The position numbers and the translations under genes were made by a program. A stretch of 56,258 bases of DNA, taken from assembly GCF_001194135.2 (NCBI RefSeq), contig NC_069004.1, positions 10,918,104 to 10,974,361 of the forward strand, read 5' to 3'. Within the stretch, counting starts at the first letter, position 1, and each line of letters begins with the position of its first letter. Of this stretch, positions 906 through 52,815 are shown piece after piece. The notes below the pieces were generated by a model. The model was not told the origin of the DNA and made no database searches. It saw nothing but the letters and a program-made list of their open reading frames with translations. The DNA is from Octopus bimaculoides (taxonomy: Eukaryota).

Positions 906-1237
906 AGGGCAACTGGCTGATTTTATATATATATTTTTAACAGAGTGTGGGCTGCCTTAATCAATCGTTTGATGCATTCAATGTATTGAAGATAACTGGC
1001 GGTAATCAACGCTAACGGTGGTCACACGAGATATTGAGTTCATCTCTTTGGATCCAAGACACTCCGTTATCACGTGTCACCAAGTGACGTCAAACATGTT
1101 TCAGGAAATGACGGTTATCATTAGAAAAGAACGGTTTCTTAATTAGCACTCTTCAATTAATGATATGACAGTCTGTTAATAAACCGGTTTGTATTTAGTA
1201 TGTGTGCGACGTTTCTTTTGTGGTTCAGTTTATATAT

Positions 1238-1621
1238 GTTGTTGGCACTCCGTCGCTTACGACGTCGAGGGTTCCAGTTGATCCTATCAACGGAACAACC
1301 TGCTCGTGAAATTAACGTGCAAGTGGCTGAGCACTCCACAGACACGTGTACCCTTAACGTGGTTCTCGGGGATATTCAGCGTGACACAGAGTGACAAGGC
1401 CGGCCCTTTGAAATACAGGCACAACAGAAACGGGTAGTAAGAGTGAGAGAAAGTTGTGGTGAAAGAGTACAGCAGGATTCGCCACCATCCCCTGCCGGAG
1501 CCTCGTGGAGCTTTAGGTGTTTTCGCTCAATAAACACTCACAACGCCCGGTCTGGGAATCGAAATCGCGCGATCCTATGACCGCGAGTCCGCTGCCCTAA
1601 CCACTGGGCCATTGCACCTCC
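1238..1621 (-). mobile_element. tRNA-derived SINE, family A, full length
   Basis: The minus strand begins GGAGGTGCAATGGCCCAGTGGTTAGGG (A box) and has a TTTCGATTCCC B box. The body is near-identical to copies at 7981, 16547 and 21994, and the 3' end is ...GTAAGCGACGGAGTGCCAACAA. Confidence 0.9.
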
Positions 1622-2897
1622 ACTCAGTTTATATATAAAGACGCATATAAATCAAACGGTTCCAAAAGCCAAAAACAAAGAACATGATGCTTGAAAACAT
1701 AAACAAAGAAACAATAATAAAGCATCTGTGAAGTTTTCATGTAAATAATTGACAATGTTTATGTCCACAGAACACAGCTGTTGGGGAGAGGCAAAGGCGG
1801 GGGTAGAGATAAAAATAGGTTGGGTGAGGTTGGGGGGGGGCGTAGTGAAATCAGCCATAATTTGTTCACCTAACATTGACCTTTGCAATACAAAGATAAC
1901 ATTTAACTCTCCAGACATGCCCCGCCTCTTCCCATCTCCCACTATTTATATCTATCTAGCTATCTAGACAGACAGATAGACAGACAAACAGATAGATAGA
2001 TAGATAGATAGATAGATATTTTACATAGACTCGCGGACATAGGCACATATTGTGACTTAGACATATAATGAAAAAACACATACATCGAGTGACACACATA
2101 TATAAACCTTTAACTGTGAGGTGTTTATACTTAAAAGTTTGTGTGTTTTTTTACCACGTACACATACGAGTCTCTCAATATTAGGCGACCATTGTTCGCA
2201 GGCGTTCAGAAACGAGAAATCACGACATTCAGTCATGATTAAGTTTACACTCCACAGTCGTATATATATAGAGAGAGGGAGAGGGGGAGAGAGAGAGAGA
2301 GAGAGCTTTGTGGGTGACTGTGTGCATGCGTGCATGTAACAAATGGCACTTTGATAACATTCACAAGCTTCTGAGCATGATCAGAGTTTAAGTATTTGAA
2401 GTTTGAAACTATAAAATTTTATAAACAGCTAAAATAAATTAATAAATAATAAAGAAAAAATCTACCAAAACAAAAACAAAAAAACATCCGACAGGGCAGA
2501 GAAAACAAAGGTTATTTATCTGGACAAGATTAAGATATGTAAAGCTGTCAGAAGGAGTAAAAAGTAGGAAATATAAACATGAAACATAACTTTCTTTTTT
2601 ATTCTTTGATAAATTCCACTTGAGATAATATCACCCCAAGATTCGAACTAACACACAGAGGGACATTGATACATGTATACATGTGTGTGGACCGGTTTAT
2701 GCATGTACTTATTTATCACTATTTATCCACGTCTTTCTGGGTAGTATTCAAACACTCAACTATGCGTTGCATCTTTTAGCAAAAGTTGTTGTGAGGTAAT
2801 GACGTTCATAGCAAACTTGTTTATTTGTTTGTCAACTCAATTTCTTATCACTCTACTCGGCTGACGCTTCGTTCTAAAGCATATACAATTTCTTGTA

Positions 2898-3790
2898 GAC
2901 TTATGACTGAGCTCCCTTCCGAATGACAGGTCGTAAGTCGATTTGGTCGAATAATTTTCGGAAATTATCTTACTGTTGTCGATTTGGTCCAACAGTTTTC
3001 GGAAATCATCTCGCTGTTGTCGATTTGGTCCAACAATTTTCGGAAACCATCTCGCTGTTGTTTCTGCGTAGAAAGGTGGTATTCAAGAAATACGAGAATG
3101 GTAGAGCGGACATCACCAGGCACTTCATTGCTACCAGTTTGACAAAAGTGGTCGAGAACAAGGCAAAATGGAAAGGCAGTGAAACAGTAATGTACCACGA
3201 AGATAAAAAAATTATGATGATTTGCAACAGTGGCAAAAGTAGAGGAATTTATTGTTAAAATAAACGACGAAAGAAATAATTTCACACATTTCTGAAATAA
3301 TTCTCTTACAAACTATTTACCCTGAACATAAATTCCAACGATGCCAGAATACCAAAATGCAACAGCACCCCACCCACTCTAGACCAGCATCAATTTGAAG
3401 AAAAACGCTAGACTCTAAAGAAAATCAGTAGAACTTTATTTACTGGTCGCCCACAAACTCCAACGACAGAATTCTGTCCGAAATGTTGAGAATTATTTTT
3501 TCTTCAATACTCAAAATATCACATCGCCCACTATATTTACGGAGGAAGAGGCGATTGCAAAATTATTTATTATTTTGCTTTTATTACTCTCTACAACACT
3601 TTTTAATTTCGTTGCAATAATTCAGTTCACAGTAGAGCATAAAAGATGGCTGCCTACACGTTGGAACTAACAACACCGTTTCAGTAGACAAGAAAGAAGC
3701 TTCCAGACAATTGTGCCAAAGTATAAACTGTTGTAATTACTGGGAATCTGCCAACGGCACTTTGGTGTATTTCCTATTGCTTCCACCAAC
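2898..3790 (+). mobile_element. Possible highly degenerate DNA transposon (Mutator-like) remnant
   Basis: Protein-like composition follows the subterminal-like tandem array. Near 3745-3790 a frameshifted NGTF-GVFPIA-F-HQL resembles the MULE DGTF...P..F.QL motif. Weak evidence. Confidence 0.25.
2937..3059. repeat. 41-bp tandem repeat, 3 copies
   Basis: Units start at 2937, 2978 and 3019. Consensus GTCGATTTGGTCCAACAATTTTCGGAAATCATCTCGCTGTT. Confidence 0.95.
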
Positions 3791-3949: not shown

Positions 3950-4820
3950 NNNNNNNNNNNNNNNNNNNNNNNNNNNNNNNNNNNNNNNNNNNNNNNNNNN
4001 NNNNNNNNNNNNNNNNNNNNNNNNNNNNNNNNNNNNNNNNNNNNNNNNNNNNNNNNNNNNNNNNNNNNNNNNNNNNNNNNNNNNNNNNNNNNNNNNNNNN
4101 NNNNNNNNNNNNNNNNNNNNNNNNNNNNNNNNNNNNNNNNNNNNNNNNNNNNNNNNNNNNNNNNNNNNNNNNNNNNNNNNNNNNNNNNNNNNNNNNNNNN
4201 NNNNNNNNNNNNNNNNNNNNNNNNNNNNNNNNNNNNNNNNNNNNNNNNNNNNNNNNNNNNNNNNNNNNNNNNNNNNNNNNNNNNNNNNNNNNNNNNNNNN
4301 NNNNNNNNNNNNNNNNNNNNNNNNNNNNNNNNNNNNNNNNNNNNNNNNNNNNNNNNNNNNNNNNNNNNNNNNNNNNNNNNNNNNNNNNNNNNNNNNNNNN
4401 NNNNNNNNNNNNNNNNNNNNNNNNNNNNNNNNNNNNNNNNNNNNNNNNNNNNNNNNNNNNNNNNNNNNNNNNNNNNNNNNNNNNNNNNNNNNNNNNNNNN
4501 NNNNNNNNNNNNNNNNNNNNNNNNNNNNNNNNNNNNNNNNNNNNNNNNNNNNNNNNNNNNNNNNNNNNNNNNNNNNNNNNNNNNNNNNNNNNNNNNNNNN
4601 NNNNNNNNNNNNNNNNNNNNNNNNNNNNNNNNNNNNNNNNNNNNNNNNNNNNNNNNNNNNNNNNNNNNNNNNNNNNNNNNNNNNNNNNNNNNNNNNNNNN
4701 NNNNNNNNNNNNNNNNNNNNNNNNNNNNNNNNNNNNNNNNNNNNNNNNNNNNNNNNNNNNNNNNNNNNNNNNNNNNNNNNNNNNNNNNNNNNNNNNNNNN
4801 NNNNNNNNNNNNNNNNNNNA
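3950..4820. other. Assembly gap (first of 13)
   Basis: N-runs at 3950-4820, 8917-9687, 11983-12160, 14081-14768, 18940-19204, 22885-23423, 24389-24442, 32805-33081, 38626-38635, 42433-42645, 49721-49949, 51513-51522 and 54491-54609. Most abut microsatellites or SINEs. Confidence 0.99.
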
Positions 4821-5858: not shown

Positions 5859-7980
5859 ACCTGCATACAAGTACGCGCATAACAAACGAACACACAAATG
5901 AGGCAAACTGGTAGAGTCGTTGACCCATCGAACAAAAATGCTTAGCTTTTTTTCCGGCCCTTTACGTTGTGATTTCAAATGTCGCTGATATCGATAAAAT
6001 TACATTGAAACCATTCAAGCACTGATTTAATCAACTTCCTCTCCCCCGAAAAATTGCTGGTCTTGTATCAAAATTTGAATTATACGAACATACACACTTA
6101 CCTACATGCATTCATACACACACACACAACACTCTTTCGCACACGTTTACATCATATGCACATTCACAGGTGTGAGCTTATGCTAATACTATATGGCTCA
6201 GTAATAGCTTGACCTGCAAGAAAAAGTGTCGACACACCCTGAAATATCACCCTATCGTTTTATAAATAGAGGGACACGCTAGAAAATGCCATTCTGAATA
6301 CCCAGTGCTAGGGAGAACAGGAAGATTATGGTTGCAATGCCTCTGAGAAAAGATAATACACCTCAAAGGTTAATCTGGGATTAACCACCAACATTTTAGT
6401 CAATCTGTTACAGCCAGCACTCACTATTATAAGCCGAAGAGCATTTCCAAAGATATATTAAATCCAATGGCACATTCTGAAGTGGGTAACGTGTAATTTG
6501 AGGGAAATTCAGCTGTTATTTGTAGCAGGTCGTGTCACTGCATAAAGGTACCACGTTGATTTGTATGTCCTCAAACACACACACACACAGATATGATGCA
6601 AATGTTGGCATAATATCTTTATTATTAAGTGGCATAGGTTGTTCAAATTGTGTATGTTACTAGAGTCATTCCTCCTCTATACAGAGTACAACTCCAAATG
6701 AATAAGAAATACAACAGGTGCGTAACTGAAAGATCGCACATTCCTTTTAGATGTAAGAACCTCACTGCACTATTTAATTCCAGATCCAAAATTTTCTGCA
6801 AATGCAAGCACAAGTAAAAACTTTTCTTGGCGAACTGGAAGACACCACCCTTTCCAGATTGAGCAGCTATCTCGCAGACTTTGGACTCCTCTCCGTTGAA
6901 CTCTTCGACAGCAAGTTTAAATGCGTCTTCTACGGTCAAATGAGACGTAATTCTAATTTCTTTCCTTCGCGTTTTCCATTTTTATTCACCCTTCTAATTT
7001 TCGCATCACCCTACTCATCTTTTTTCGTTGTGATTTCTCATGTACAGGCGTCCTGGTTTTCAAATAGAACAAACAATATGCTTAGACACTTAAGGCTGCT
7101 TTGAGAGACAAAGGTGTGTTATAAAAGCATGTCTAGACACGTGTCTTCACAGCAAGAATCTATTAGCTCTTATCTTACTACTGTGTACAATAAATGACAA
7201 TTGTCTCTCTCACTGGATACAGTACTTTTTTGTTGGTCTTACCTTAACGGAACAGTAAACCATGTATGTGTGTGTGTGTGTGTCTGGGTGTACGTGCAGA
7301 TATAAACGTGTGTAGATTCTGCTTGAAAAAAAAAGTGACTAATTGTTACATCACAATTATAATGATAAGGAATAAATAAGTAAAAAGGCGACACAGAAAT
7401 TCTTGACCGCGAAGCCTTCTCTTTTAAACTGTTGCTTTACAAAACACGACATGCTATGAACGAAAGTGATATGTTGTTTATGAATAGAACAACATGCGAG
7501 TGTGTGTGTGTGTGTGTATGTATGTATATTCATGTAATAACTGGGTGTACACGACTGCGTGCGTGCGTGTGGTGTATGTGTGTTTGCATAATCAGGTTAA
7601 TTACACAATGTTTTGGCTTCTTTTCCACTGGACAATTTTTGTCATTTTTTTTGTTTGTGTTTTGTTTTCGTTGTGGTGGTTAGAGGGAGGAAATGACGGG
7701 GCAGGAGGGGTTAGAGGTGAGGTGAGGGGAATTACTTTTTGTGTGAGTTATATTTAATCTTTTGTTTGTTTGTTTGATATTCTATATTATCAGCCCAGTT
7801 AATTATCAGACATTTTATTTAAAGTATCACCTTTTGTTTTTATTGTGTTATTCTTGTATGTATTGCGGCAGACAAGCAGACGGAGTGAGACACAGACGGG
7901 CGGGCGGGCGGACAGATAGGATGACTGAGACAGACAAGCATGCAGAAAGAGAGACAGACAGACACACGTGTGCGGGTGTG

Positions 7981-8361
7981 TGGAAGTGCAATGGCCCAGA
8001 GGTTGGGGCTGCTGACGCGCGGTCGTAGGACCGCAGTTTCGATTCTCAGACCATACGTTGTGAGTGTTTATAAAGCGAAAATACCTAAAGCTCCACGAGG
8101 CTGCGGCAGAGGGTGGTGGCAAACCCTGCGGTACTCTTTTACCACAACTTTCTATCACTCTTTCTTCTTGTTTCTGTTGTACCTGTATTTCAAAGGGCCA
8201 GCCTTGTGATACACTGTGTCACGCTAACTCTCCCCGAGAAGTATATTAAGAGTACACGTGTCTGTGGAGTGCTCAGCCACTTGCACGTTAATTTCACGAG
8301 CAGGTTGTTCCGTTGATCGGATCAACTGGAGCCCTCGTCGTCGTAACCGACAGAGTTCCAC
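7981..8361 (+). mobile_element. tRNA-derived SINE, family A
   Basis: Head TGGAAGTGCAATGGCCCAGAGG. The body is the reverse complement of the 1238-1621 copy. Confidence 0.9.
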
Positions 8362-8386
8362 GATATATATATATATATATATACAC

Positions 8387-8441
<55 letters not shown>

Positions 8442-9687
8442 CACAAAGTACTCTTAATGTTTATGCATATATGCGCGTGTGTGTAATCACACAATGTGAA
8501 TAAAAACAGGCATAGCGTGTGCATACACACATATAATTGTGTGTGTGTGTGTGTGTGTCTGCGTGTATTCGCGCGCGCATACAATATTACTGTATATAGT
8601 TAATTAAGCTAATTAATTAGCTCTGTGGTATTTGGTAGACTATATTTATTGGGAGCTGTTGTTTGGAGATGACTTTGGCAACATCTACATCACAGCGTCA
8701 TCACCAACATCATCACGAACAACACCAAAAAATAAAAAAAAACAGAAGTAAAAAAACCAACGTCAGACTGACCAATAAAGGGACGACCACAATAAGCATC
8801 TTTTTCCGTTCCAGGAATTCATTGTTTATATATGTATCTGGCATTAGCTGGTGGTGGTCGTGGTGGGGTTTCAATATTATACATCTCCCTCATATATATA
8901 TATATATATATATATANNNNNNNNNNNNNNNNNNNNNNNNNNNNNNNNNNNNNNNNNNNNNNNNNNNNNNNNNNNNNNNNNNNNNNNNNNNNNNNNNNNN
9001 NNNNNNNNNNNNNNNNNNNNNNNNNNNNNNNNNNNNNNNNNNNNNNNNNNNNNNNNNNNNNNNNNNNNNNNNNNNNNNNNNNNNNNNNNNNNNNNNNNNN
9101 NNNNNNNNNNNNNNNNNNNNNNNNNNNNNNNNNNNNNNNNNNNNNNNNNNNNNNNNNNNNNNNNNNNNNNNNNNNNNNNNNNNNNNNNNNNNNNNNNNNN
9201 NNNNNNNNNNNNNNNNNNNNNNNNNNNNNNNNNNNNNNNNNNNNNNNNNNNNNNNNNNNNNNNNNNNNNNNNNNNNNNNNNNNNNNNNNNNNNNNNNNNN
9301 NNNNNNNNNNNNNNNNNNNNNNNNNNNNNNNNNNNNNNNNNNNNNNNNNNNNNNNNNNNNNNNNNNNNNNNNNNNNNNNNNNNNNNNNNNNNNNNNNNNN
9401 NNNNNNNNNNNNNNNNNNNNNNNNNNNNNNNNNNNNNNNNNNNNNNNNNNNNNNNNNNNNNNNNNNNNNNNNNNNNNNNNNNNNNNNNNNNNNNNNNNNN
9501 NNNNNNNNNNNNNNNNNNNNNNNNNNNNNNNNNNNNNNNNNNNNNNNNNNNNNNNNNNNNNNNNNNNNNNNNNNNNNNNNNNNNNNNNNNNNNNNNNNNN
9601 NNNNNNNNNNNNNNNNNNNNNNNNNNNNNNNNNNNNNNNNNNNNNNNNNNNNNNNNNNNNNNNNNNNNNNNNNNNNNNNNNNNNNNN

Positions 9688-9806
9688 CCGATATTGATGG
9701 AGTAGGTGCTAGACCTACAAAGAAAGTCGATTTGGGGTCGATCTGTTCGACTTAAAGGCCGTGCTCCAGCATGGCCGCAGTCAAATGACTGAAACAAGTA
9801 AAAAAA
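9688..9806 (+). mobile_element. SINE family B, 3' end
   Basis: GGGGTCGATCTGTTCGACTTAAAGGCCGTGCTCCAGCATGGCCGCAGTCAAATGACTGAAACAAGTAAAA matches the 3' end of the 28554-28958 copy. Confidence 0.85.
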
Positions 9807-9883
9807 AATACACACATGCACACGGTCACGTAATTACACAACGATGTTTCTCCATACATAGCCTACAAGAAATATGCACGTAC

Positions 9884-16139: not shown

Positions 16140-17075
16140 GTGTCTTAAGGGAAAGCAAGTTAGTTGTTAAGGCCAGCTAAAAAATTAGGTGAAAGATCAG
16201 TTGTTGTTCTCGACGAAGCCAAGAAATAGGGTACCGTGGTTTTGTTTAATCCTTACAGCAATGAAATGGAAATGAGAGCGAGCTGGGGAACTGAAGTGCC
16301 TAGCCACAAGGCTGACTCCTCTGGTGTTATTAACGTTGAATGTCCAGACAGTGTTTCCTGAAATAATCAAGCAAACGGTGACTAGTTGTCTCCTAAAGTT
16401 CAGAAAGTTACACGGTTGGCGTATAAAGCAGTAAACGATAATTTCTGAGTTGAAAATGTAATGTTCAAGGACGTGAAAGGATCACCCGAGTGTGCCTAAG
16501 GTGGTGTTGCACTGGAGAAAAGGAAAGATTTGTAACGGGAGTAGGTGGTTGGTTGGCACTCCGTCGGTTACGACGACGAGGGTTCCAGTTGATCCAATCA
16601 ACGGAACAGCCTGCTCGTGAAATTAACGTGCAAGTGGCTGAGCAATCCACAGACACGTGTACCCTTAACGTAGTTCTCGGGGATATTCAGCGTGACACAG
16701 TGTGACAAGGCTGACCCTTTGAATTACAGGCACAACAGAAACAGGAAGTAAGAGTGAGAGAAAGTTGTGGTGAAAGAGTACAGGAGGGTTCGCCACCATC
16801 TCCTGCCAGAGCCTCGTGGAGCTTTAGGTGTTTTCGCTCAATAAACACTCACAACGCCCGGCCTGGGAATCGAAACCGCGAACCTACTGGCCTAACCACT
16901 GGGCCATTGCGCTCCAACGGGAGTAGGTAAAAGACACAGGTTGGATGAGACGGTGTGGACCGTTAAGGGAAAGGATTAGGATTGGTGATGGATAGGGTAC
17001 GTGGCTAGAGAGCAGAAATACAGTTAATGGCAAGATCTCAGGGGTGAGCAGTACTGATGGCAGATATGGTGTTAA
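16140..17075 (-). mobile_element. Degenerate Penelope-like GIY-YIG remnant, interrupted by a SINE
   Basis: Frameshifted minus-strand pieces IVYCFIRQPC / ETTSHRLLDYFRKHCLDI / VARHFSSP..SH / RREQQLIFHL follow the PLE consensus VVYCI.C..C...YIGET.RRL.DRF.EH....PVA.HF....H....R...EQ.LIF.L. Confidence 0.65.
16547..16915 (-). mobile_element. SINE family A with 13-bp target-site duplication
   Basis: TSD AACGGGAGTAGGT at 16534-16546 and 16916-16928. The tRNA head has a short deletion. Confidence 0.93.
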
Positions 17076-18900: not shown

Positions 18901-19204
18901 ACCTTGGGGGTGTGCCTTATATCATAGGCCCCTGGCCTGNNNNNNNNNNNNNNNNNNNNNNNNNNNNNNNNNNNNNNNNNNNNNNNNNNNNNNNNNNNNN
19001 NNNNNNNNNNNNNNNNNNNNNNNNNNNNNNNNNNNNNNNNNNNNNNNNNNNNNNNNNNNNNNNNNNNNNNNNNNNNNNNNNNNNNNNNNNNNNNNNNNNN
19101 NNNNNNNNNNNNNNNNNNNNNNNNNNNNNNNNNNNNNNNNNNNNNNNNNNNNNNNNNNNNNNNNNNNNNNNNNNNNNNNNNNNNNNNNNNNNNNNNNNNN
19201 NNNN

Positions 19205-19257
<53 letters not shown>

Positions 19258-19436
19258 GCCAGTTTTTCTCCCCTTCGCCACGACTTGACAACGGTTATTG
19301 GTTAATTTAGGTCACCATGATCTAGTAGTTCAGCAAAAGAGAACCGATAGAATAAGTACTTGGGGCGATCTGTTCGATAAAAACCATTCAAGGAGGTGCC
19401 CCAGTCTGGTCGCAGTCCAATGACTGAATCAAGTAG
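18901..19436 (+). mobile_element. Degenerate SINE family B split by a gap at its internal microsatellite
   Basis: A CCTTGGG...ATAGGCC piece precedes the gap. After the gap come (TG)n and GACCGATAGAATAAGTAC...ATGACTGAATCAAGTA. Confidence 0.7.
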
Positions 19437-20132
19437 ACACACACACACACACACACACGGTATAACGTTGTACACATGCTAAATTTTAATGATGTCATAC
19501 GAAATATACTGAATGACGTCATCAGAATAATATAAGGCTGTTAATAATCTATGCTGTTTCACCTATAAAACAGCAATATATACTGTGAGAAGCGTCTTCA
19601 CTCATCCTTCCACTCTCTCTCTCTCTCTCTCGTCATCACTAACCTACACTGTCTCCAGTGCAGTCTCGTAGAATATCAGTCTTATTGCTTTTATTCCAAA
19701 CTGAAACCTACTAGAAATAGCAACCACATTCCCTCACATTACATCTCATCGTCATAAATAAATACATACGTTATGCAGTTCCTGATTATATAAGACAAGG
19801 TGGTCATAGCGGGTATGTCTGCTCAAACGGGACTGGCTTGTGTACTAAACAACCAAAAGCACAAACATACAACCTGCTAAAAATAGCAGCCATCAGATCA
19901 CTGCGTATCAAAGCGGGAAGGCCATTTGAATAACAATGACCTGTTATATAAAAGGTTGTAACGCTTTTTGTTTTTCTTTCTGCTCTGAGCTGACCAAGAG
20001 ATACAGCAGACCAACGCGTATAAATACGTACCGTTACTTAATTATAGTACATACGTAGATTATTATAGTTACCTATCTACGTATCTGTTTTCTTCCTTTG
20101 TCACTGTGTGTGTGTGTATGTATACACACACA

Positions 20133-20345
20133 CACACATGCTCAATGTATGTGCCTCCGTTGTTCGCCTGTAGGCTGCGGCGTAGCGCGGTGGGGATGCC
20201 TCCGTCAAAGCGACGGGTGTTAAGATACCTTAGACATCTTAAGACACCTTAAGACACCTTAAGACACCTTTGAGGGAAGCAACCCTACGACGCTATTTTG
20301 CAGCTTGTCGGTGAACAATCGGGTTACATTTGTTGAGTATGTGTG
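20133..20345 (+). ncRNA. Long imperfect fold-back (78-nt arms, 57-nt repetitive loop); candidate hairpin RNA
   Basis: 20133-20210 aligns without gaps to the reverse complement of 20268-20345: 54 Watson-Crick pairs, 14 G.U pairs in the + RNA and 10 mismatches. The inverted repeat is certain; its function is unknown. Confidence 0.5.
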
Positions 20346-21574
20346 GTCCATAATGTTTACAACGCTAGCACTGCTTCTAATTCATAATTGAATCAGTCAT
20401 CGGACTGCAGTCATGATGGGGTACCGCCTTGAAAGGGTTATTAGTTGAAGAATTCGACTCCAATTCTTTTTTTTAGTTTGGTACTTATATAACTAATTTA
20501 TTTATCTAAATTATCCTAACACTAGCTTAAGGATAATTAAGTTGTTTTACTAAATTCTTTGCTCTATTTAAAAGTAATTGAAAGAAACACAGAACATCTC
20601 AAAATACATACGGTAACGAAGGGGAATGCTTTAGAAAAGAAAAAGACTTTCACTTCAGTGAGAATTTCTTGTGTAGGTTAATCAATACATTACCACTCCC
20701 CTGAATTATCAAAATTCATAGAACCAGCGAAGTGTCTCAAATGGGACTTTAAACATGCTAAGAATAGCAGCCAAATCTCCATATCACATCCACCGTTTTA
20801 GAAGACGTTACGCTAAGTAATAGTCACGGTTTTCATACAGAGGAAACAAGACGAGATGTTCTCGACTGGAATGCGTTTGATAATTTCTTCTCTATTATAT
20901 AGAATTCCGTGTTCAGTATACACAGTGCCATGATAAAGCCTTCGTGCAATTTTAATAACACAAAGAAAATTTGTACACCAGCTTTGTAACGAATCTCTCT
21001 CTCTCACACACATACACACTCTCTCTCACACACTCAGACACACACAGACTGAATAGACTTGGTTATGTTCCAAAGTGAATATACCGTCTTTAGTCTGTTT
21101 TAAATTTCTTGGTGGAATTGTGAGATTGTGCTCCTAGATTGGGGCTGGCGTGATTTGAGAGAAAATATTTTGCTGAAGTAAAGCTTAATTGGCAGAAATT
21201 CAATGAAAGAAAATCGCTTTTTTATGTAATGAATGTTTAAAAAAATCTTTGTAATATAATTGTAGCAACAAAACGGTAAATGTCAACTTGCTCCGTTGTA
21301 GGACTCAACTTTTGTGGAGCTTTGTTATGTGAGTAATAATGCGATAGACAGAAGCTTTCAATCCGTTAAATTGTTGCCTAAATACACGACAGAAGAAATA
21401 AATTAAAAACACACAAACACCCTAATACACTACGTATGTGTTTGTGTATGCATATCTCAAAACAAGAGATTAGAAAAACTATTTTGGTGCAATTTATTCA
21501 CCATTACATGTGTTTCGTTTGCTAATAGGAGTTACAAGAGTATACACGTAGAAGAAAGATTGAAGATATTTCCT

Positions 21575-21993: not shown

Positions 21994-22372
21994 TGTTGGC
22001 ACTCGGTCGCTTACGACGTCGAGGGTTCCAGTTGATCCGATCAACGGAACAGCCTGCTCGTGAAATTAACGTGCAAGTGGCTGAAGACTCCACAAACACG
22101 TGTACCCTTAACGTAGTTCTCGGGGATATTCAGCGTGACACAGTGTGACAAGGCTGACCCTTTGAAATACAGGCACAACAGAAGCAGGAAGTGAGAGTGA
22201 GAGAAAGTTATGGTGAAAGAGTACAGCAGGGTTCGGCCACCATCCCCTGCCGGAGCCTCGTGGAGCTTTAAGTGTTTTTGCTCAATAAACACTCACAACG
22301 CCCGGTCTGGGAATCGAAATCGCGATCCTATGACCGCGAGCCCACTGCCCTAACCACTGGGCCATTGCGCCT

Positions 22373-22374
<2 letters not shown>
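21994..22374 (-). mobile_element. SINE family A, full length
   Basis: GGAGGCGCAATGGCCCAGTGGTTAGGG head; high identity to 1238-1621. Confidence 0.92.
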
Positions 22375-22415
<41 letters not shown>

Positions 22416-25958: not shown

Positions 25959-26314
25959 AACACACATACACACGTATGTGTGTGCTTTATATATATATAT
26001 ATATATATATATACATACACACAAACACATATACACACGTGTGTATGCTTCATATATATATACATACATATACAAACACATACACACGCGTGTGTGCTTT
26101 ATATATATATATATATGATTGGTAAACATTTGTGCTTTACAAAGGGGATAATTTTTTTTAGAGAAAGAGGGGGTGAGACAGAGGTAATATATAATCCAAT
26201 CTGTGTGTATACTTCATTAGAATCTAAAGCTTTCTCACTTGTAAATCTGACTTTCCTCTCCGATCCTATTGTTGGACCACTTTACATAAAAGTGGTGTGT
26301 ATGTGTGTGCGTTA

Positions 26315-28553: not shown

Positions 28554-28958
28554 TGGCTGTGTGGTAAGTAGGTTGCTTACCAACCACATGGTTCCGGGTT
28601 CAGTCCCACTGCGTGGCACCTTGGGCAAGTGTCTTCTACTATAGCATCGGGCCAACCAATGCCTTGTGAGTGGATTTGGTAGACGGAAACTGAAAGAAGC
28701 CCGTCGTATATATGTATATGTATATATATGTATGTGTGTGTATATGTTTGTGTGTCTGCGTTTGTCCCCCCAACATCGCTTGACAACCGATGCTGGTGTG
28801 TTTACGTCCCCGTAACTTAGCGGTTCGGCAAAAGAGACCGATAGGATAAGTACTAGGTTTACAAAGAATAAGTCCTGGGGTCGATTTGCTCGACTAAAGG
28901 CGGTGCCCCAGCATGGCCGCAGTCAAATGACTGAAACATGAAAAAAAAAAAAAAAAAG
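28554..28958 (+). mobile_element. SINE family B, full length, young
   Basis: TGGCTGTGTGGTAAG head, GGGTTCAGTCCC B box, CORE-like CCTTGGGCAAGTGTCTT, internal (TA/TG)n, tail ATGACTGAAAC and an A-rich end. Confidence 0.95.
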
Positions 28959-31599: not shown

Positions 31600-32078
31600 C
31601 ACAGACATGATAGAAGTAAATTGACACCCTATAAAACATTGTTTTATGTGTATTTTTAACTTGAAAAGGTATATATACTTTTCATTATTTTACATTTTTA
31701 TTTTTCAGATTTTATACGTGACTGTTTAATCATGCCACGTAGAATAGAAGCCTTAGAAGTGTCCGAATTTCAAAGTAAATGTATTGTGGGTCAATCTGAA
31801 GGTGGACTTAGCGTAAAATCGCAGAAAACCTTGGGATCCCACATTCTCCAGTTAATAGAGCGATTATGCAATTCACCAGAGCGGGTAAAGAGTTCACATC
31901 ACTTCTGCCCTCTGACAGAACCCTTTGCTATGTTAAGACAAGTGTGGAGGATCATCTTTATTCCATAGCAGAACAAGTTGATTTCAGTCCCAGAACAGCT
32001 GTCAGGTATCTCCACAAACTTGGCTATATTGACAGAGCAGCAAGAAGCAAGCCACCTCTTCGACTAGCCAATATCAAG
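31600..32078 (+). mobile_element. Tc1-family transposon, left end plus N-terminal transposase pseudogene
   Basis: TIR-like CACAGACATGATAGAAGTAAATTGACACC at 31600. From ATG 31732: MPRR..LEVSEFQSKCIVGQSEGGLS / RKIAENLGIPHSPVNRAIMQFTRAGKE...SDRTL...SPRTAVRYLHKLGY..RAARSKPPLRLANIK (paired-like and homeo-like HTH region). Truncated by a SINE. Confidence 0.85.
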
Positions 32079-32079
32079 C

Positions 32080-32395
32080 CTGATACTTATTCTACCGGTC
32101 TCTTTTGCCGAGCCGCTAAGTTACGGAGACGTAAACTCACCAACACCCGTTGCCAAGCGGTACCGTGGGTGGGGAACAAACACAGAGACAGACACACACA
32201 CACACACATAGACACGCACATATTTATATATACGACGGGCTGCTGTCAGTTCCCGTCTACCAAATCCACTTACAAGGCTTCGGTCGGTGCGAGGCTATTG
32301 TAGAACGCATTTACCAAATGTGCCACGCTGTGAGACTGAACCCGAAAGCGTAGAGTTGGGAAGCAAGTTTCTTACCACACAGCCACATCTGCACC
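32080..32395 (-). mobile_element. SINE family B
   Basis: Reverse complement of the 28554 copy, including the internal microsatellite. Confidence 0.88.
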
Positions 32396-33517: not shown

Positions 33518-34190
33518 TTTCCTAATCTTCATAATTACAACAATACAGATTGGATCTATGAGCGAGCTATCCTGGCTTCAAAATATGTTGCAGTACATAG
33601 CATTAATAATATGTTATTGAATAAGCTTCCAGGAGAAATATTCACTTATAACTCAATTGACAGTGTTGTTGATGATCAGGATAGTGTTAACTACCCCCAT
33701 CGAATTTTTGAACTCACTGGAACCACCAGGAACAGCTCCTCGTGGAAAAAGGGACTCCTATTAAGCTATTGCGCAATTTGTCTCCACCAAAATTATGCAA
33801 TGGAACAAGATTAATTGTGTACAATCTTCTGAAGAACTGTATTGAGGCAAATATTCTCACTGGTTGTGGTAAAGGTGACACCGTCTTCATTCCTTGCATA
33901 CCAGTTGTACTATTTAATGTCTCATTCCAATTTAAACGGTTACAGTTTCCTATCCGAGTTTTTTTCTTTTAATTTAAAAAATTTTTTTTTTTTTTTAATT
34001 GCCATGAACATTAATAAAAGTCAGAGCCAATCACTAAAAGTTACTGGACTGCAACTTCAAGAACAATGCTTTTCACATGGTCACCTTTACGTCGGTGCAT
34101 CGCGTGTGGGAGCAAATGCAAATCTTTTTGCTTATGCACACCGAAATAAAACAACAACAAAAACATTGTTTATAAAGAAATATTCACTCT
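33518..34190 (+). mobile_element. Helitron RepHel C-terminal PIF1-type helicase pseudogene
   Basis: FPNLHNYNNTDWIYERAILA...YNSIDSV...NYP / IEFLNSLEPPG / KGTPIKLLRNLSPPKLCNGTRLIV...QFKRLQFPIRV / AMNINKSQSQSL...FSHGHLYVGASRV...KNIVYKEI are canonical PIF1/Helitron motifs, with frameshifts. Confidence 0.92.
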
Positions 34191-36016: not shown

Positions 36017-36113
36017 AAAAGAGACCGATAGAATAAGTCCTGGGGTTGATTTGTTCGATTAAAAAGTGGTGCTCTAGCAGGGCCGCAGTTAAATGACTGA
36101 AATAAGTAAAAGA
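36017..36113 (+). mobile_element. SINE family B, 3' tail
   Basis: AAAAGAGACCGATAGAATAAGTCCTGGGG...AAATGACTGAAATAAGTAAAAGA. Confidence 0.85.
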
Positions 36114-36337
36114 ATATATATGCAGAGAGAATCACTATTATACATAATTCATAATTGTATAACCAGAAAAGGTACCCAGGTGCAATTTCAGAGAATATAT
36201 ATTCTCAACATATCTCAATGCAAGCGTTAGAGCATGTAGGGGTGAGAGAAAGTAATGCATTTATTGGAAATGTGTAGCAAATTCAAGAAACATACGTAGA
36301 AGGGGAAGATTTAAGCCCATATCTTATTTCTTTTGTG

Positions 36338-38625: not shown

Positions 38626-38780
38626 NNNNNNNNNNATGCTGGTGTGTTTACGTCCCCGTAACTTAGCGGTTCGGCAAAAGAGACTAGCCTTCCAAAGAAT
38701 AAGTCCTGGGGTCGATTTGCTCGACTAAAGGCGGTGCTCCAGCATGGCCACAGCCAAATGACTGAAACAAGTAAAAGAGT
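38473..38780 (+). mobile_element. SINE family B (5' truncated), gap in its internal (TG)n
   Basis: High identity to the 28554 copy from CTGCGTGACACCTTGGGCAAG to ATGACTGAAACAAGTAAAAGA. Confidence 0.92.
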
Positions 38781-39830
38781 AATACACACAATATACACAC
38801 ACAATCACATATACATAAGCTGTGTACATTTATATTTATCGCGGACGCGTACACTTTGAATGTACAATGATGTTCGCTACATTGACTGCCTCGGAAGAGA
38901 AATTTTACATATAGGCAATGCCTGTGATAACACACTGAGCTGATTATAAAATATAGGGGGGGGTGTACACACACGAAGGGCCTCAGTACAGTATGTCTAT
39001 AAAATTTCACTCAGGAGATATTAGTCCAAAATAGAATAAACTTGGAATAAATACTAATACCACGTTGTTCCCAATTCAACATTGCTATTCATGCGCCCAG
39101 CTATACAATGTTCGTACATAAAACATCTTTAAATAATCATTCGATACGTAGTGTACAGTGATTCCCTGTTGTCTAAAATAAAACAAAGTGTTTTCACGTA
39201 AAAGATTTCTATGTATATTATAAACGCATGAACTACACCGATGTATCTACGTTTTATCGTTGTGCGCTTAGTTTATCTCTTTCTCTTTGTCTCTTTATAT
39301 TGAATATTTTGGGCTGTGTCTCTACATAGGAGCTACGAAAATTGCACACATTTACTCCATATATATATATATATATATATATATACTACCAAATGTCACA
39401 GTCAAAATGAAATACTTACAAACACACCGGCACACATGTAGCGGTTAGGGCACAAGCGTGCACACACAGAGATACAGGCGCATAAACGCACGCTCAGATA
39501 TGCTGATGTGCATCGAAGCCTACCAAGCTAGAGAGGATGCAGCTGCGAAATATGTAACATTGTGCGCTGCCGGATTAACAATGTAACGGAATTGAATAAA
39601 CGATCAGGAATAGGAAAAAGTATTTGTTTGTTCTCTGGAGTGATATAATGACAGAGGATGAAAGTGAATAAACGATCGGGAATAACAATGGGACGGAAAT
39701 GGAACAGAGGAATGACAATGACCTACTTTAGCCTTAAGGAAGGCTTTAAATAGAAACCGATGGATTGACAGGTTTACCAATCAAATGTATCAATACAGCT
39801 CCTTCTCTCTCCTCTCCTCTTCTCATTTAT

Positions 39831-40203
39831 TCTTTTATTCCGTTATTCTTTCAGTCATTCGACTGCGCCGATGCTGGAGCACCGCTTTGAAGGGTTTTAG
39901 TCGAACAATCTAAACCTAGTACTTTATCATTTTCTTTTGCCGAACCACTAAGTTACGTCGACGTAAACACAAGAACGTCTAGCGGTAATGGAGGACAAAC
40001 AGACACAAAGACACACACATGTCTATTTATTTATTACACGATGGGCTTCTTTCAGTTTCCGTCTACCAGATCAACTCATTAGGCTTTGGTCGGCCCGAGG
40101 CTATAATATAAGACACTTGCCCTAGGTGCCACACTGTGAGACTGAACCCAGAACCATGTAGTTGGGAAGCAAACTTCGTACCACACAGCCACGACCACGC
40201 CTG
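39831..40203 (-). mobile_element. SINE family B, full length
   Basis: Reverse complement with head GCAGGCGTGGTCGTGGCTGTGTGG. Confidence 0.9.
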
Positions 40204-42432: not shown

Positions 42433-42739
42433 NNNNNNNNNNNNNNNNNNNNNNNNNNNNNNNNNNNNNNNNNNNNNNNNNNNNNNNNNNNNNNNNNNNN
42501 NNNNNNNNNNNNNNNNNNNNNNNNNNNNNNNNNNNNNNNNNNNNNNNNNNNNNNNNNNNNNNNNNNNNNNNNNNNNNNNNNNNNNNNNNNNNNNNNNNNN
42601 NNNNNNNNNNNNNNNNNNNNNNNNNNNNNNNNNNNNNNNNNNNNNAAAAAGCAAGTACTGGGGTCGATTCGTTCGACTAGAAAAAAAAAATTCAAGGCGA
42701 TGCCCCAGCATGGCCGCATTCTGACTGAAACAAGTAAAA
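42261..42739 (+). mobile_element. SINE family B split by a gap at its internal (TA)n
   Basis: Head GGTGTGGCTGTGTAGTAAG and CORE-like TTGGGCAATTGTCTT; the tail CCCCAGCATGGCCGC...GACTGAAACAAGTAAAA follows the gap. Confidence 0.85.
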
Positions 42740-47800: not shown

Positions 47801-47941
47801 GGTAGGACTGACTCAGAACAACTATGCCTCGGCCATCCTCCTCATTATTAATACCGCTGCAACAGCAGCTGCTGTTCCATCAGAGCTGGCCTGGAGCTAC
47901 ACCACTACATCCCAACTACACCATTATGACACTATACCACC

Positions 47942-48121
<180 letters not shown>

Positions 48122-48138
48122 CAATAACCACCACTAAC

Positions 48139-51797: not shown

Positions 51798-52675
51798 ATA
51801 GAAAGGTTATATATACAACGAATGGAAGTTGGCAGAGGCCTTATACAGCTAGAAAACTATTACAAAATAACCACCATAGGACTACAAAAATACCTACTTC
51901 AGAAGCAAGGAAAACTAATACAAATAGCCACAAAACACGAGCAAAACCTGAAGTCATGGTACTTAAGAACAATGAAGAAAACGAAGAAACAACAAAAGCT
52001 GTAAAACAACTGAAATCCAAATAAAAACTGGAACAGTAACGGATCATGATAAAATGATGGCAAGAAAATCCCCTTTATGCTAAACTCTAGGTTAAACTAA
52101 ACACAAAAGAAATAGACAAAGCAAAATCCCAACAATGGCTGAGAAGCTCAGGACTCAAATCAGAAACTGAAAGATTTTTAATTGCAGCACAAAACCAGAG
52201 TCTCCCCACCAGAAATTATTAAAAACATTTAACGGAAAGAAACATAACAAGTAACTGCAGAATATGTGGAGATGGAGAAGAAACAATAACTCATATTATC
52301 TCTGGCTGCCCAGTCCTGGATAAGAAGGAATATATTCACTGACACGACAGAGTTGGGATCTATATACACTGGAAGCTATGCCAACACTATGGAATAATAA
52401 CAGAAAAAAGATGGTACAGGCACACCCCAGAAAAAGTCACAGAAAATGAGAAAGCAACCATATTATGGGATACGCCAATACACACAGATATAGAAATTAA
52501 GGCCAATAGGCCGGATATAGTTGTCAGAGATCACCAAGAAAAGAAATGCCTTCTAATCGATATCTCAATACCAACAGATGACAACGTTTCTCTAAAAGAA
52601 ATGGAGAAACTTTAAAATACAAAGACCTGGAAACAGAGGTAACTCGAACGTGGAGTCTATAGACAGAAACAACAA
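51798..52675 (+). mobile_element. R4/Dong-clade non-LTR retrotransposon, 3' coding part (CCHC zinc knuckle plus restriction-like endonuclease)
   Basis: ERLYIQR..VGRGLIQLE...WLRSSGLKSETERFLIAAQNQSLPTRNY...CRICGDGEETITHIISGCP...HDRV..YIHWKLC...WDTPIHTD.EIKANRPDIVV...LIDISIP...KE.EKL*KYKDL, with several stops and frameshifts. Confidence 0.92.
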
Positions 52676-52694: not shown

Positions 52695-52815
52695 TCTTTT
52701 ATTTTTACTCGTTTCAGTCATTGGATTGCGGCCATGTTGGGACACCGCACTCAAGGTTTTAACAAACAAACTGACCCCCAGGACTTATTTTTAATTCTGG
52801 TACTTATTCTATTCG
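52695..52815 (-). mobile_element. SINE family B, 3' tail
   Basis: TTTTACTCGTTTCAGTCATTGGATTGCGGCCATGTTGGG...GGTACTTATTCTATT. Confidence 0.85.

What the first reader, a model, noticed from the sequence alone, without database searches (positions are those of the whole stretch)
20133..20345. GC-rich 78-bp fold-back with strand-biased G.U pairing: candidate hairpin-RNA locus or ADAR-hyperedited retrocopy
Seen in sequence: the arms 20133-20210 and 20268-20345 align without gaps, with 54 Watson-Crick pairs and 24 differences, of which 16 are transitions. Fourteen of these (11 G.U, 3 U.G) still pair in the + strand RNA and only 2 would pair in the - strand RNA (68/78 versus 56/78 paired). A hand-calculated two-sided binomial test gives P of about 0.004 if both classes are equally likely. 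Only 3 of the 11 right-arm T positions lie in a CpG context, so methyl-CpG decay does not explain the bias. The 57-nt loop holds about five copies of AAGACACCTT around palindromic CTTAAG and can extend the stem. Inference: either selection keeps a long + strand RNA duplex (as in Drosophila hpRNA/endo-siRNA loci or an unusual miRNA precursor), or all 14 changes are A-to-G on one strand from ADAR hyperediting of a hairpin that was then retro-inserted. The second is plausible because coleoids are known for extensive A-to-I editing.
Basis: partly seen in the sequence, partly recalled or inferred. Interest (0 to 1): 0.8.

Follow-up and report, generated by a model that had tools for sequence, protein, structure and literature searches.

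The report
Decaying DNA palindrome with wobble bias
A 213-base inverted repeat is really there and would fold better as + strand RNA, but the strand bias rests on about a dozen bases, weakens when the alignment is changed, and nothing available shows transcription, editing, conservation or other copies, so it is most likely an old, decaying palindrome.

Summary
The arms 20133-20210 and 20268-20345 give 54 Watson-Crick pairs, 14 G.U-type and 2 A.C-type transitions, and 8 other mismatches. Binomial P is 0.0042. The + strand RNA folds at -106.3 kcal/mol and the - strand at -90.3. The loop holds 5.2 copies of a 10-mer.

The inverted repeat is far beyond chance. The strand bias is not secure:
- P is 0.013 with one compensated gap pair.
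- P is 0.06-0.14 when the palindrome is followed into the "loop", where it continues.
- P is about 0.04 after correcting for the ten inverted repeats in the window.

Nine other inverted-repeat pairs sum to 62:62, so regional strand-asymmetric mutation is excluded.

No signature of either proposed mechanism appears. There is no poly(A) and no target-site duplication. The 3' neighbours do not fit the invertebrate ADAR motif. No Rfam family matches, and there is no second copy in 52 kb. A published survey reports no endo-siRNA pathway in molluscs.

No cephalopod genome, RNA-seq or small-RNA data could be reached, so the decisive tests remain undone.

Best reading (about 50%): a spacer-less palindrome about 0.2 substitutions per site per arm old, with its centre expanded by slippage and no demonstrated function. 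Interest is low to moderate.

The parts
20133..20210 (.). Left arm of the inverted repeat (78 bp, 60% G+C, about 10 CpG)
   Evidence: It aligns without gaps to the reverse complement of 20268-20345 with 54/78 identities. BLAST gives E=5e-8 and nhmmer gives 3.8e-22 and 3.7e-21 for the two arms.
20211..20267 (.). It is really the inner continuation of the palindrome: GGTGTTAAG on the left pairs with CTTAAGACACC on the right after a 4-nt indel.
   Evidence: The global alignment and the gapped 218-nt self-hit. The MFE structures place small helices here.
20220..20270 (+). Tandem array of 5.2 copies of TTAAGACACC. Each junction forms CTTAAG. Most likely a slippage expansion of the right half of the palindrome centre.
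   Evidence: TRF gives period 10, 88% matches and score 81. See also family D2.
20268..20345 (.). Right arm of the inverted repeat (78 bp, 46% G+C). It carries 11 of the 14 T residues that lie opposite G.
20105..20138 (.). Palindromic microsatellite (TG)7-TATGTATA-(CA)8 abutting the left arm and overlapping its first 6 bases. The arm ends CACACA/TGTGTG are microsatellite-like.
   Evidence: Inverted repeats I3, I4 and I11. It gives only weak hits to mir-297/mir-466 models (33 bits against gathering scores of 85-90).
20374..20480 (-). Flanking context: a 5'-truncated copy of an abundant SINE-like repeat. Its 3' end points at the fold-back, 28 bp from the right arm. With the + strand copy at 19265-19440 it forms an inverted pair around the locus.
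   Evidence: Alignment A1 with eight other window copies.

Best explanation
The locus is an old DNA palindrome that is decaying neutrally. A roughly 95+95 bp inverted duplication arose with little or no spacer, centred on CTTAAG. It formed either by fold-back or template-switch replication at a break, or as a palindromic non-autonomous transposon copy. Replication slippage later expanded its right-central 10-mer to about five copies. The two arms have since drifted apart by about 0.2 substitutions per site each.

On this reading the excess of G.T over A.C differences is a sampling fluctuation in about 14-19 transitions, partly inflated by one multi-base event and by the choice of boundaries. 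It is not the trace of an RNA function.

Shown: the palindrome, its extension into the loop, the tandem array, the divergence, and the fragility of the bias. Inferred: the mode of origin, neutrality, and the absence of function.
For: - The inverted repeat is real.
- The palindrome continues into the 'loop' towards a CTTAAG centre, and the 10-mer array lies on one side of that centre.
- Arm-to-arm Jukes-Cantor distance is 0.396. This is the same age class as the older repeats around it, whose pairs are 69-80% identical.
- The transition/transversion ratio is 2.0, within the 1.1-2.2 seen for repeats in the window.
- About 13% of positions are unpaired, and there are blocks of up to four consecutive non-Watson-Crick positions. 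This is not what a maintained duplex looks like.
- The bias drops from P=0.004 to 0.013-0.14 under equally defensible alignments.
- There is no Rfam family and no tRNA.
- There is no retroposition hallmark.
- The setting is repeat-rich, between a microsatellite and a truncated SINE.
Against:
- It differs from the 62:62 of nine control inverted-repeat pairs in the same window (Fisher P=0.006).
- There are no indels in 78 bp at 31% divergence, against about 1.7 gap columns expected from the controls. This is a weak point.
- The left arm keeps an unusually high G+C (60%) and CpG density in a 33-40% G+C neighbourhood.
- No second copy was seen, so the transposon version of the origin is unsupported.
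Confidence: 0.5

Rival explanations
1. A DNA-level, locus-specific strand-asymmetric mutation process. Cytosines of the + strand were deaminated (C to T) while the palindrome was exposed as single-stranded DNA, for example as the non-template strand of a transcribed region or as a stalled lagging-strand template at the hairpin. This would give 11 changes in the right arm and 3 in the left. The ancestor would then have been a palindrome of about 60-64% G+C, like the present left arm.
For: - All 14 sites fit C to T on one strand.
- The left arm looks like the less decayed copy, with 60% G+C and many CpGs.
- At four sites the left arm has CpG where the right arm has TpG, which is the common direction of decay.
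- The two variant units of the central tandem array differ from the three identical units by T in place of C on the + strand.
Against: - Nine other inverted-repeat pairs in the window show no + strand excess (62:62), so the process would have to be confined to this 213 bp.
- No deaminase-like neighbour preference appears: the 5' neighbours are A3 C4 G4 T3.
- The left arm is barely G-skewed, which argues against an R-loop.
- An 11 against 3 split between the arms is not predicted.
Confidence: 0.15
2. An imprint of ADAR editing. The + strand is transcribed, the hairpin is hyper-edited, and 14 A-to-G changes became genomic. This could happen by preferential fixation of G at edited sites ('hardwiring'), or, by reverse transcription and re-insertion of an edited RNA.
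For: - All 14 sites fit A to G on the + strand inside a duplex.
- G is rare at the 5' neighbour (1/14), as expected for ADAR (PMC5625713).
- Hyper-editing of inverted-repeat dsRNA is exceptionally abundant in Octopus bimaculoides (PMC5625713).
- In human and Drosophila, G is reported as virtually the only alternative allele at edited sites (PMC7186786).
- The inferred ancestor (42-46% G+C) would be closer to the local background.
Against: - The 5' G depletion is not significant against unedited A sites (4/25).
- The 3' neighbour is A at only 1/14 sites against 8/25, opposite to the invertebrate motif.
- Editing would be 50% in one arm and 18% in the other.
- There is no poly(A), no target-site duplication and no parent copy.
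- The GGCG/TTTT block needs an extra transversion in the middle of three 'edits'.
- The organism was not verified as a coleoid.
Confidence: 0.12
3. Selection on a + strand structured RNA: a long hairpin non-coding RNA, an atypical miRNA or shRNA-like precursor, or an ADAR or dsRNA-sensor substrate. The duplex would be kept by tolerating only G.U-preserving transitions.
For: - 68/78 positions pair in + strand RNA against 56/78 in - strand RNA.
- MFE is -106.3 against -90.3 kcal/mol.
- There are no indels in the arms.
- G.U asymmetry is an accepted indicator of the transcribed strand of structured RNAs (general knowledge, as used by RNAstrand; recalled, not tested here).
Against: - This is a single sequence, so no covariation test is possible.
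- Ten unpaired positions and tandem or quadruple non-Watson-Crick blocks weaken the stem.
- The bias fades when the inner palindrome is included.
- No Rfam family matches.
- A 78-bp stem with a 57-nt loop is not Drosha-type geometry.
- Molluscs are reported to lack a dedicated endo-siRNA pathway (PMC12479628).
- A TTTT run inside the right arm (20296-20299) would terminate a Pol III transcript.
Confidence: 0.1

Closest known systems
Spacer-less or short-spacer genomic palindromes formed by fold-back or template-switch inverted duplication
   Same: Two arms in inverted orientation meet at a short palindromic centre (CTTAAG). The locus is single-copy as far as can be seen, lies next to microsatellites, and has a slippage-prone centre.
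   Different: The arms are 31% diverged, so the founding event cannot be reconstructed. No junction microhomology or partner breakpoint can be identified.
MITEs and Foldback-type transposons, including mollusc MITE-like elements with internal tandem repeats (recalled from the bivalve literature, not tested here)
   Same: The element is short (213 bp) and non-coding, with long terminal inverted repeats and a central tandem array.
   Different: There is no target-site duplication and no second copy in 52 kb, even with a profile search. The arms are far more diverged from each other than is usual for a recognisable MITE copy.
Drosophila hpRNA / endo-siRNA loci
   Same: An inverted repeat that could be transcribed as one long hairpin, with one strand pairing better than the other.
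   Different: The stem is 78 bp at 69% Watson-Crick, against hundreds of near-perfect base pairs (recalled). No target-gene homology is known. siRNA-type Dicer and Argonaute proteins and endo-siRNAs were not found in molluscs (PMC12479628).
ADAR hyper-edited inverted-repeat dsRNAs, and retroelement copies that carry editing clusters in the genome
   Same: One-strand A/G differences are clustered within a dsRNA-forming inverted repeat, and G is depleted at the 5' neighbour.
   Different: Known cases are called from RNA against the genome, or from a copy against its parent or consensus. Here there is neither RNA nor a parent. The 3' neighbour pattern does not fit, and there is no poly(A) or target-site duplication.
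Animal pre-miRNA hairpins
   Same: An imperfect hairpin with G.U pairs and a strongly negative folding z-score.
   Different: The stem is about twice the canonical length and the loop is 57 nt. No Rfam miRNA model matches the arms; the only hits are to the neighbouring TG/CA microsatellite, far below threshold.

Membership tests
hpRNA / endo-siRNA locus | Long inverted repeat able to form an intramolecular dsRNA | tested here: met
   78-bp arms. The + strand RNA MFE is -106.3 kcal/mol with z=-9.5.
hpRNA / endo-siRNA locus | Near-perfect duplex of well over 100 bp | tested here: not met
   54/78 Watson-Crick pairs (69%), or 68/78 with G.U. The stem reaches about 95 bp at most when extended.
hpRNA / endo-siRNA locus | About 21-nt small RNAs that depend on Dicer-2 and AGO2, in a host that has the siRNA pathway | not testable with these tools
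   No small-RNA data are available. The literature reports no siAgo, no siDicer and no endo-siRNAs in 32 molluscs (PMC12479628). The organism of the window was not verified.
hpRNA / endo-siRNA locus | Arms homologous to a target gene | tested here: inconclusive
   There is no similar sequence elsewhere in the window. Peptides encoded by the arms have no candidate in the 5.8-billion-protein collection. The genome itself could not be searched.
Canonical animal miRNA precursor | Hairpin of about 60-80 nt with a stem of about 33-35 bp and a small terminal loop, matching a known family | tested here: not met
   213 nt in total, with a 78-bp stem and a 57-nt centre. No Rfam hit on the arms at E up to 10.
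MITE / Foldback transposon | Terminal inverted repeats | tested here: met
   The arms run to both ends of the element.
MITE / Foldback transposon | Target-site duplication flanking the element | tested here: not met
   The only flank k-mer of 6 or more bases shared between the two sides is microsatellite TGTGTG.
MITE / Foldback transposon | Multiple copies in the genome | tested here: inconclusive
   No second copy in 52 kb of non-N sequence by BLAST or nhmmer. No match in the metagenome or prokaryote collections. The source genome is not available.
Retro-inserted ADAR-hyperedited RNA | Cluster of A-to-G differences on one strand relative to an unedited parent | not testable with these tools
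   No parent or consensus is available. Using the other arm as a proxy, 14 sites are compatible, but the direction of change is unknown.
Retro-inserted ADAR-hyperedited RNA | ADAR neighbour motif: 5' G depleted, and 3' A enriched in invertebrates | tested here: inconclusive
   5' G is at 1/14 sites against 4/25 controls (not significant). 3' A is at 1/14 against 8/25, the wrong direction (motif from PMC5625713).
Retro-inserted ADAR-hyperedited RNA | Retroposition hallmarks: 3' A-rich tail and target-site duplication | tested here: not met
   There is no run of 5 or more A residues after the right arm. The nearest homopolymer is T8 at 20467, inside the flanking SINE. No target-site duplication was found.
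Fold-back / template-switch palindrome | Arms converge on a short central palindrome with little or no spacer | tested here: met
   The alignment continues through the 'loop' (GGTGT-TAAG against GGTGTCTTAAG) after a 4-nt indel. The spacer is explained by a 10-mer tandem expansion.

The most novel reading that the evidence does not exclude
The + strand of this palindrome is transcribed as a long hairpin. Either its duplex is kept by selection through G.U-preserving changes, or its edited adenosines have been progressively fixed as genomic G. In the first case it would be a cephalopod long-hairpin RNA in a phylum reported to lack endo-siRNAs. In the second it would be a genomic fossil of ADAR hyper-editing in non-coding dsRNA. 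The evidence here does not exclude either, because no expression, orthologue or copy-number data could be reached.
Probability: 0.2. Interest if true: 0.6.

Novelty: new member of a known kind. Interest (0 to 1): 0.2.

Why it matters
If the strand bias were real and RNA-driven, a single genomic sequence would reveal the transcribed strand of a long hairpin. It would also give a test case for two open questions. First, do heavily editing animals convert edited A to genomic G in non-coding dsRNA? Second, do molluscs, reported to lack endo-siRNAs, still keep long hairpin RNAs?

As it stands, the locus mainly shows how fragile a G.U-asymmetry argument is when it rests on one sequence and about 16 transitions. 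The useful product is the control: G.U+ against G.U- counts over all inverted repeats in the region. This could be applied genome-wide to ask whether such biased fold-backs are over-represented.

Tried and rejected
- **Regional strand-asymmetric mutation** (transcription or replication direction). Rejected, because nine other inverted-repeat pairs sum to 62:62.
- **Methyl-CpG decay.** Rejected, because it is strand-symmetric and only 4/14 sites are in CpG context.
- **Membership of the window's repeat families.** Rejected. The arms show no significant similarity to the 390-bp SINE-like family or to the 3'-conserved SINE family that flanks the locus.
- **A flanking direct duplication or LTR-like repeats around the locus.** Nothing significant was found.
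- **Known RNA families and tRNA-derived origin.** None found.
- **APOBEC-like signature.** Reading the changes as G-to-A in the element's orientation, the 3' neighbours are GC4, GT4, GG3 and GA0, with no GG/GA preference.
- **Finding relatives elsewhere.** A degenerate 28-mer covering both arms gave no match in the metagenome or prokaryote genome collections. Seven exact look-ups of window ORFs, four of them across the fold-back, found nothing on record. A profile of the two arm-encoded peptides had no candidate among 5.8 billion proteins.
- **Verifying the organism.** A transposon ORF (52343-52612) has relatives only in unnamed ENA metagenome assemblies, so the coleoid origin stays unverified.
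- **A third large protein search with a flanking ORF.**

Full report
**1. Observation**

The sequence at 20133-20345 is as described. A script that paired 20133+i with 20345-i gave 54 Watson-Crick pairs, 11 G(left).T(right), 3 T(left).G(right), 2 A.C-type and 8 transversion-type oppositions. That makes 68/78 positions pairable in + strand RNA and 56/78 in - strand RNA. The left arm is 60% G+C and the right arm 46%, in a window of about 38% G+C whose immediate flanks are 33-40%.

ViennaRNA folds the + strand RNA at -106.3 kcal/mol (z=-9.5 against dinucleotide shuffles). It folds the - strand at -90.3 (z=-8.1), and + strand DNA at -48.5. One arm finds the other in the window with BLAST E=5e-8, and nothing else with E below 0.1.

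Tandem Repeats Finder reports 5.2 copies of TTAAGACACC at 20220-20270. Three of the 11 right-arm T positions, and 4 of all 14 sites, are in CpG context. The exact binomial P for 14:2 is 0.0042.

**2. How solid is the strand bias?**

The bias is sensitive to choices that the sequence does not dictate.
- Three of four scoring schemes prefer a compensated pair of 1-nt gaps near 20154-20160. This removes two G.U sites and gives 12:2 (P=0.013).
- The palindrome does not stop at 20210/20268. After a 4-nt indel the alignment continues (GGTGT-TAAG against GGTGTCTTAAG) towards a CTTAAG centre. Including that part adds three A.C-type differences and gives 14:5 or 12:5 (P=0.06-0.14).
- Three G.U sites lie in one block, GGCG opposite TTTT with a transversion in the middle. 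This may be one complex event.
- The window holds nine other inverted-repeat pairs with aligned lengths of 48-299 nt, so a corrected P for the best case is about 0.04.

On the other side, those nine pairs make a clean control. Any regional + strand C-to-T or A-to-G excess would produce G.U+ excess in them too. They sum to 62 G.U+ against 62 G.U-. Fisher's test against 14:2 gives P=0.006.

I conclude that the bias is a real property of this alignment and is not a regional mutational asymmetry. Statistically it is marginal.

**3. Anatomy and surroundings**

The window is a draft scaffold with 13 N gaps totalling 4,223 N. It is dense in microsatellites and interspersed repeats.

Immediately left of the fold-back lies a perfect palindromic microsatellite, (TG)7-TATGTATA-(CA)8, at 20105-20138. 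Its CA half runs into the left arm.

Twenty-eight bases right of the right arm begins a 5'-truncated, - strand copy of a SINE-like family. The family's conserved 3' end is ...AAGGCGGTGCCCCAGCATGGCCGCAGTCnAATGACTGAAACAAGTAAAA, and it occurs at least nine times in the window. A + strand copy at 19265-19440 makes an inverted SINE pair around the locus.

The fold-back itself is unrelated to either repeat family. It has no second copy in the window, even with an nhmmer profile built from both arms. There is no target-site duplication, and no A-run follows the right arm. No flanking direct duplication was found.

There is no Rfam family at gathering score in the whole window. No hit falls on the arms at E up to 10, apart from one chance-level mir-642 match (E=0.39, 21 bits against a gathering score of 90). 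The mir-297/mir-466 hits (33 bits or less, against 85-90) fall on the TG/CA microsatellite. No tRNA gene was found.

**4. Age and neutrality**

Arm-to-arm divergence is 24/78, a Jukes-Cantor distance of 0.396 or about 0.2 per arm. That is the divergence class of the older repeat pairs in the window (69-80% identity).

If the window is from an octopus, this corresponds to the JC 0.2 peak that a recent O. vulgaris repeat study dates to about 56 My (PMC13282606). That comparison is conditional, because the organism is unverified.

The transition/transversion ratio of 2.0 lies within the 1.1-2.2 of window repeats. Zero indels in 78 bp compares with about 1.7 gap columns expected from the controls, which is not significant.

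Ten positions are unpaired even in + strand RNA. The non-Watson-Crick positions cluster into blocks of two to four. This looks like decay rather than a maintained helix.

**5. Tests of the proposed mechanisms**

*ADAR.* I treated the 14 G-opposite-T sites as edited and the 25 A-opposite-T sites as unedited.
- The 5' neighbour is G at 1/14 against 4/25, the right direction but not significant.
- The 3' neighbour is A at 1/14 against 8/25.
- Porath et al. report upstream G depletion in all Metazoa. [quoted passage not shown]
- So the 3' pattern does not fit. The implied editing is also lopsided, 11/22 in the left arm against 3/17 in the right.
- The retro-insertion version lacks a poly(A), a target-site duplication and a parent.
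- A milder version needs no retro-insertion. It is suggested by Popitsch et al., who found that G is almost the only alternative allele at edited sites in human and fly (PMC7186786). It cannot be tested here.

*Deaminase acting on DNA.* Treating the 14 T-opposite-G sites as mutated C gives no neighbour preference.

*hpRNA.* The duplex is much shorter and poorer than the Drosophila type (recalled). A 2025 survey found no siRNA-type Argonaute or Dicer and no endo-siRNAs in 32 molluscs, including O. bimaculoides (PMC12479628).

*miRNA.* The geometry and the Rfam results are negative.

**6. Attempts to bring in related sequence**

No eukaryotic genome or RNA-seq resource is reachable with these tools.
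- A degenerate 28-mer matching both arms found nothing in the metagenome or prokaryote genome collections.
- Exact look-ups of four ORFs across the fold-back and three elsewhere in the window found nothing.
- A profile of the two arm-encoded peptides had no candidate in the protein collection.
- A transposon ORF at 52343-52612 has relatives (up to 85% amino-acid identity) only on contigs of unnamed ENA metagenome assemblies.

I therefore could not confirm that the window is coleoid. Copy number, conservation and transcription remain untested.

**7. Verdict**

The most economical account is a spacer-less palindrome whose centre expanded by slippage and whose arms have decayed for a long time. 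On this account the G.U excess is a fluctuation (confidence about 0.5).

The remaining probability is split between:
- a locus-specific + strand C-to-T process (0.15);
- an ADAR-related A-to-G imprint (0.12);
- selection on a + strand hairpin RNA (0.10);
- and other explanations.

It is a new instance of a known kind of feature. Its interest is low to moderate unless the decisive data overturn the neutral reading: genome copy search, outgroup polarisation of the 14 sites, stranded RNA-seq and small-RNA-seq.

Noticed in passing
window 20105-20138: Perfect palindromic compound microsatellite (TG)7-TATGTATA-(CA)8, directly abutting the fold-back. It gives sub-threshold hits to the mir-297/mir-466 models (33 bits or less, against gathering scores of 85-90), which are microsatellite-like hairpins.
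   Followed up: partly
window 19265-19440 (+), 20374-20480 (-); also 9733-9816, 28865-28950, 36030-36120, 38696-38790, 39832-39967 (-), 42647-42736, 52701-52807 (-): An abundant SINE-like family with a conserved 3' end (...GGTGCCCCAGCATGGCCGCAGTCnAATGACTGAAACAAGTAAAA), often followed by a CA microsatellite. Two copies form an inverted pair (55 nt, 76% complementary, 950 bp apart) around the fold-back. This is the classic arrangement for dsRNA formation if the region is transcribed.
   Followed up: partly
window 1231-1626, 7968-8371 (-), 16548-16886, 21994-22376: Four copies of a G+C-rich repeat of about 390 bp, 85-94% identical to each other. Each contains a doubled CAGCGTGACA-like 10-mer. Presumably a younger SINE family.
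   Followed up: no
window 33712-33969 (+): An ORF fragment matches the Pif1 helicase 2B domain (PF21530, E=3e-7), suggesting a Helitron or Pif1-like transposon remnant. A weak Tc3-type transposase HTH match lies at 31812-32300 (E=0.0045, below the Pfam cut-off).
   Followed up: partly
window 52343-52612 (+); loci L001-L004: This transposon-derived ORF has its only relatives (46-85% amino-acid identity) on contigs of ENA metagenome assemblies: ERZ23326556, ERZ4903303, and ERZ25067538 with a 1-Mb contig at 234x. These look like host-derived eukaryotic contigs inside metagenome assemblies. L001 is 78% identical in DNA to window 52287-52672.
   Followed up: partly
window about 47900-48130: A very long CAA/CAG-type trinucleotide run. 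It translates as more than 60 consecutive Q in one frame and poly-N or poly-V in others. It is followed by ACC/ATC-rich low-complexity sequence up to about 49100.
   Followed up: no
window 2937-3061 and 26003-26115: Minisatellites: a 41-bp unit in 3.0 copies (90% matches) and a 49-bp unit in 2.3 copies (85% matches).
   Followed up: no
window, 13 runs of N (for example 3950-4819, 8917-9687, 18940-19204): 4,223 N in 13 gaps, so the window is a gapped draft scaffold. One gap ends only 930 bp left of the fold-back, which limits what can be said about its upstream context.
   Followed up: no
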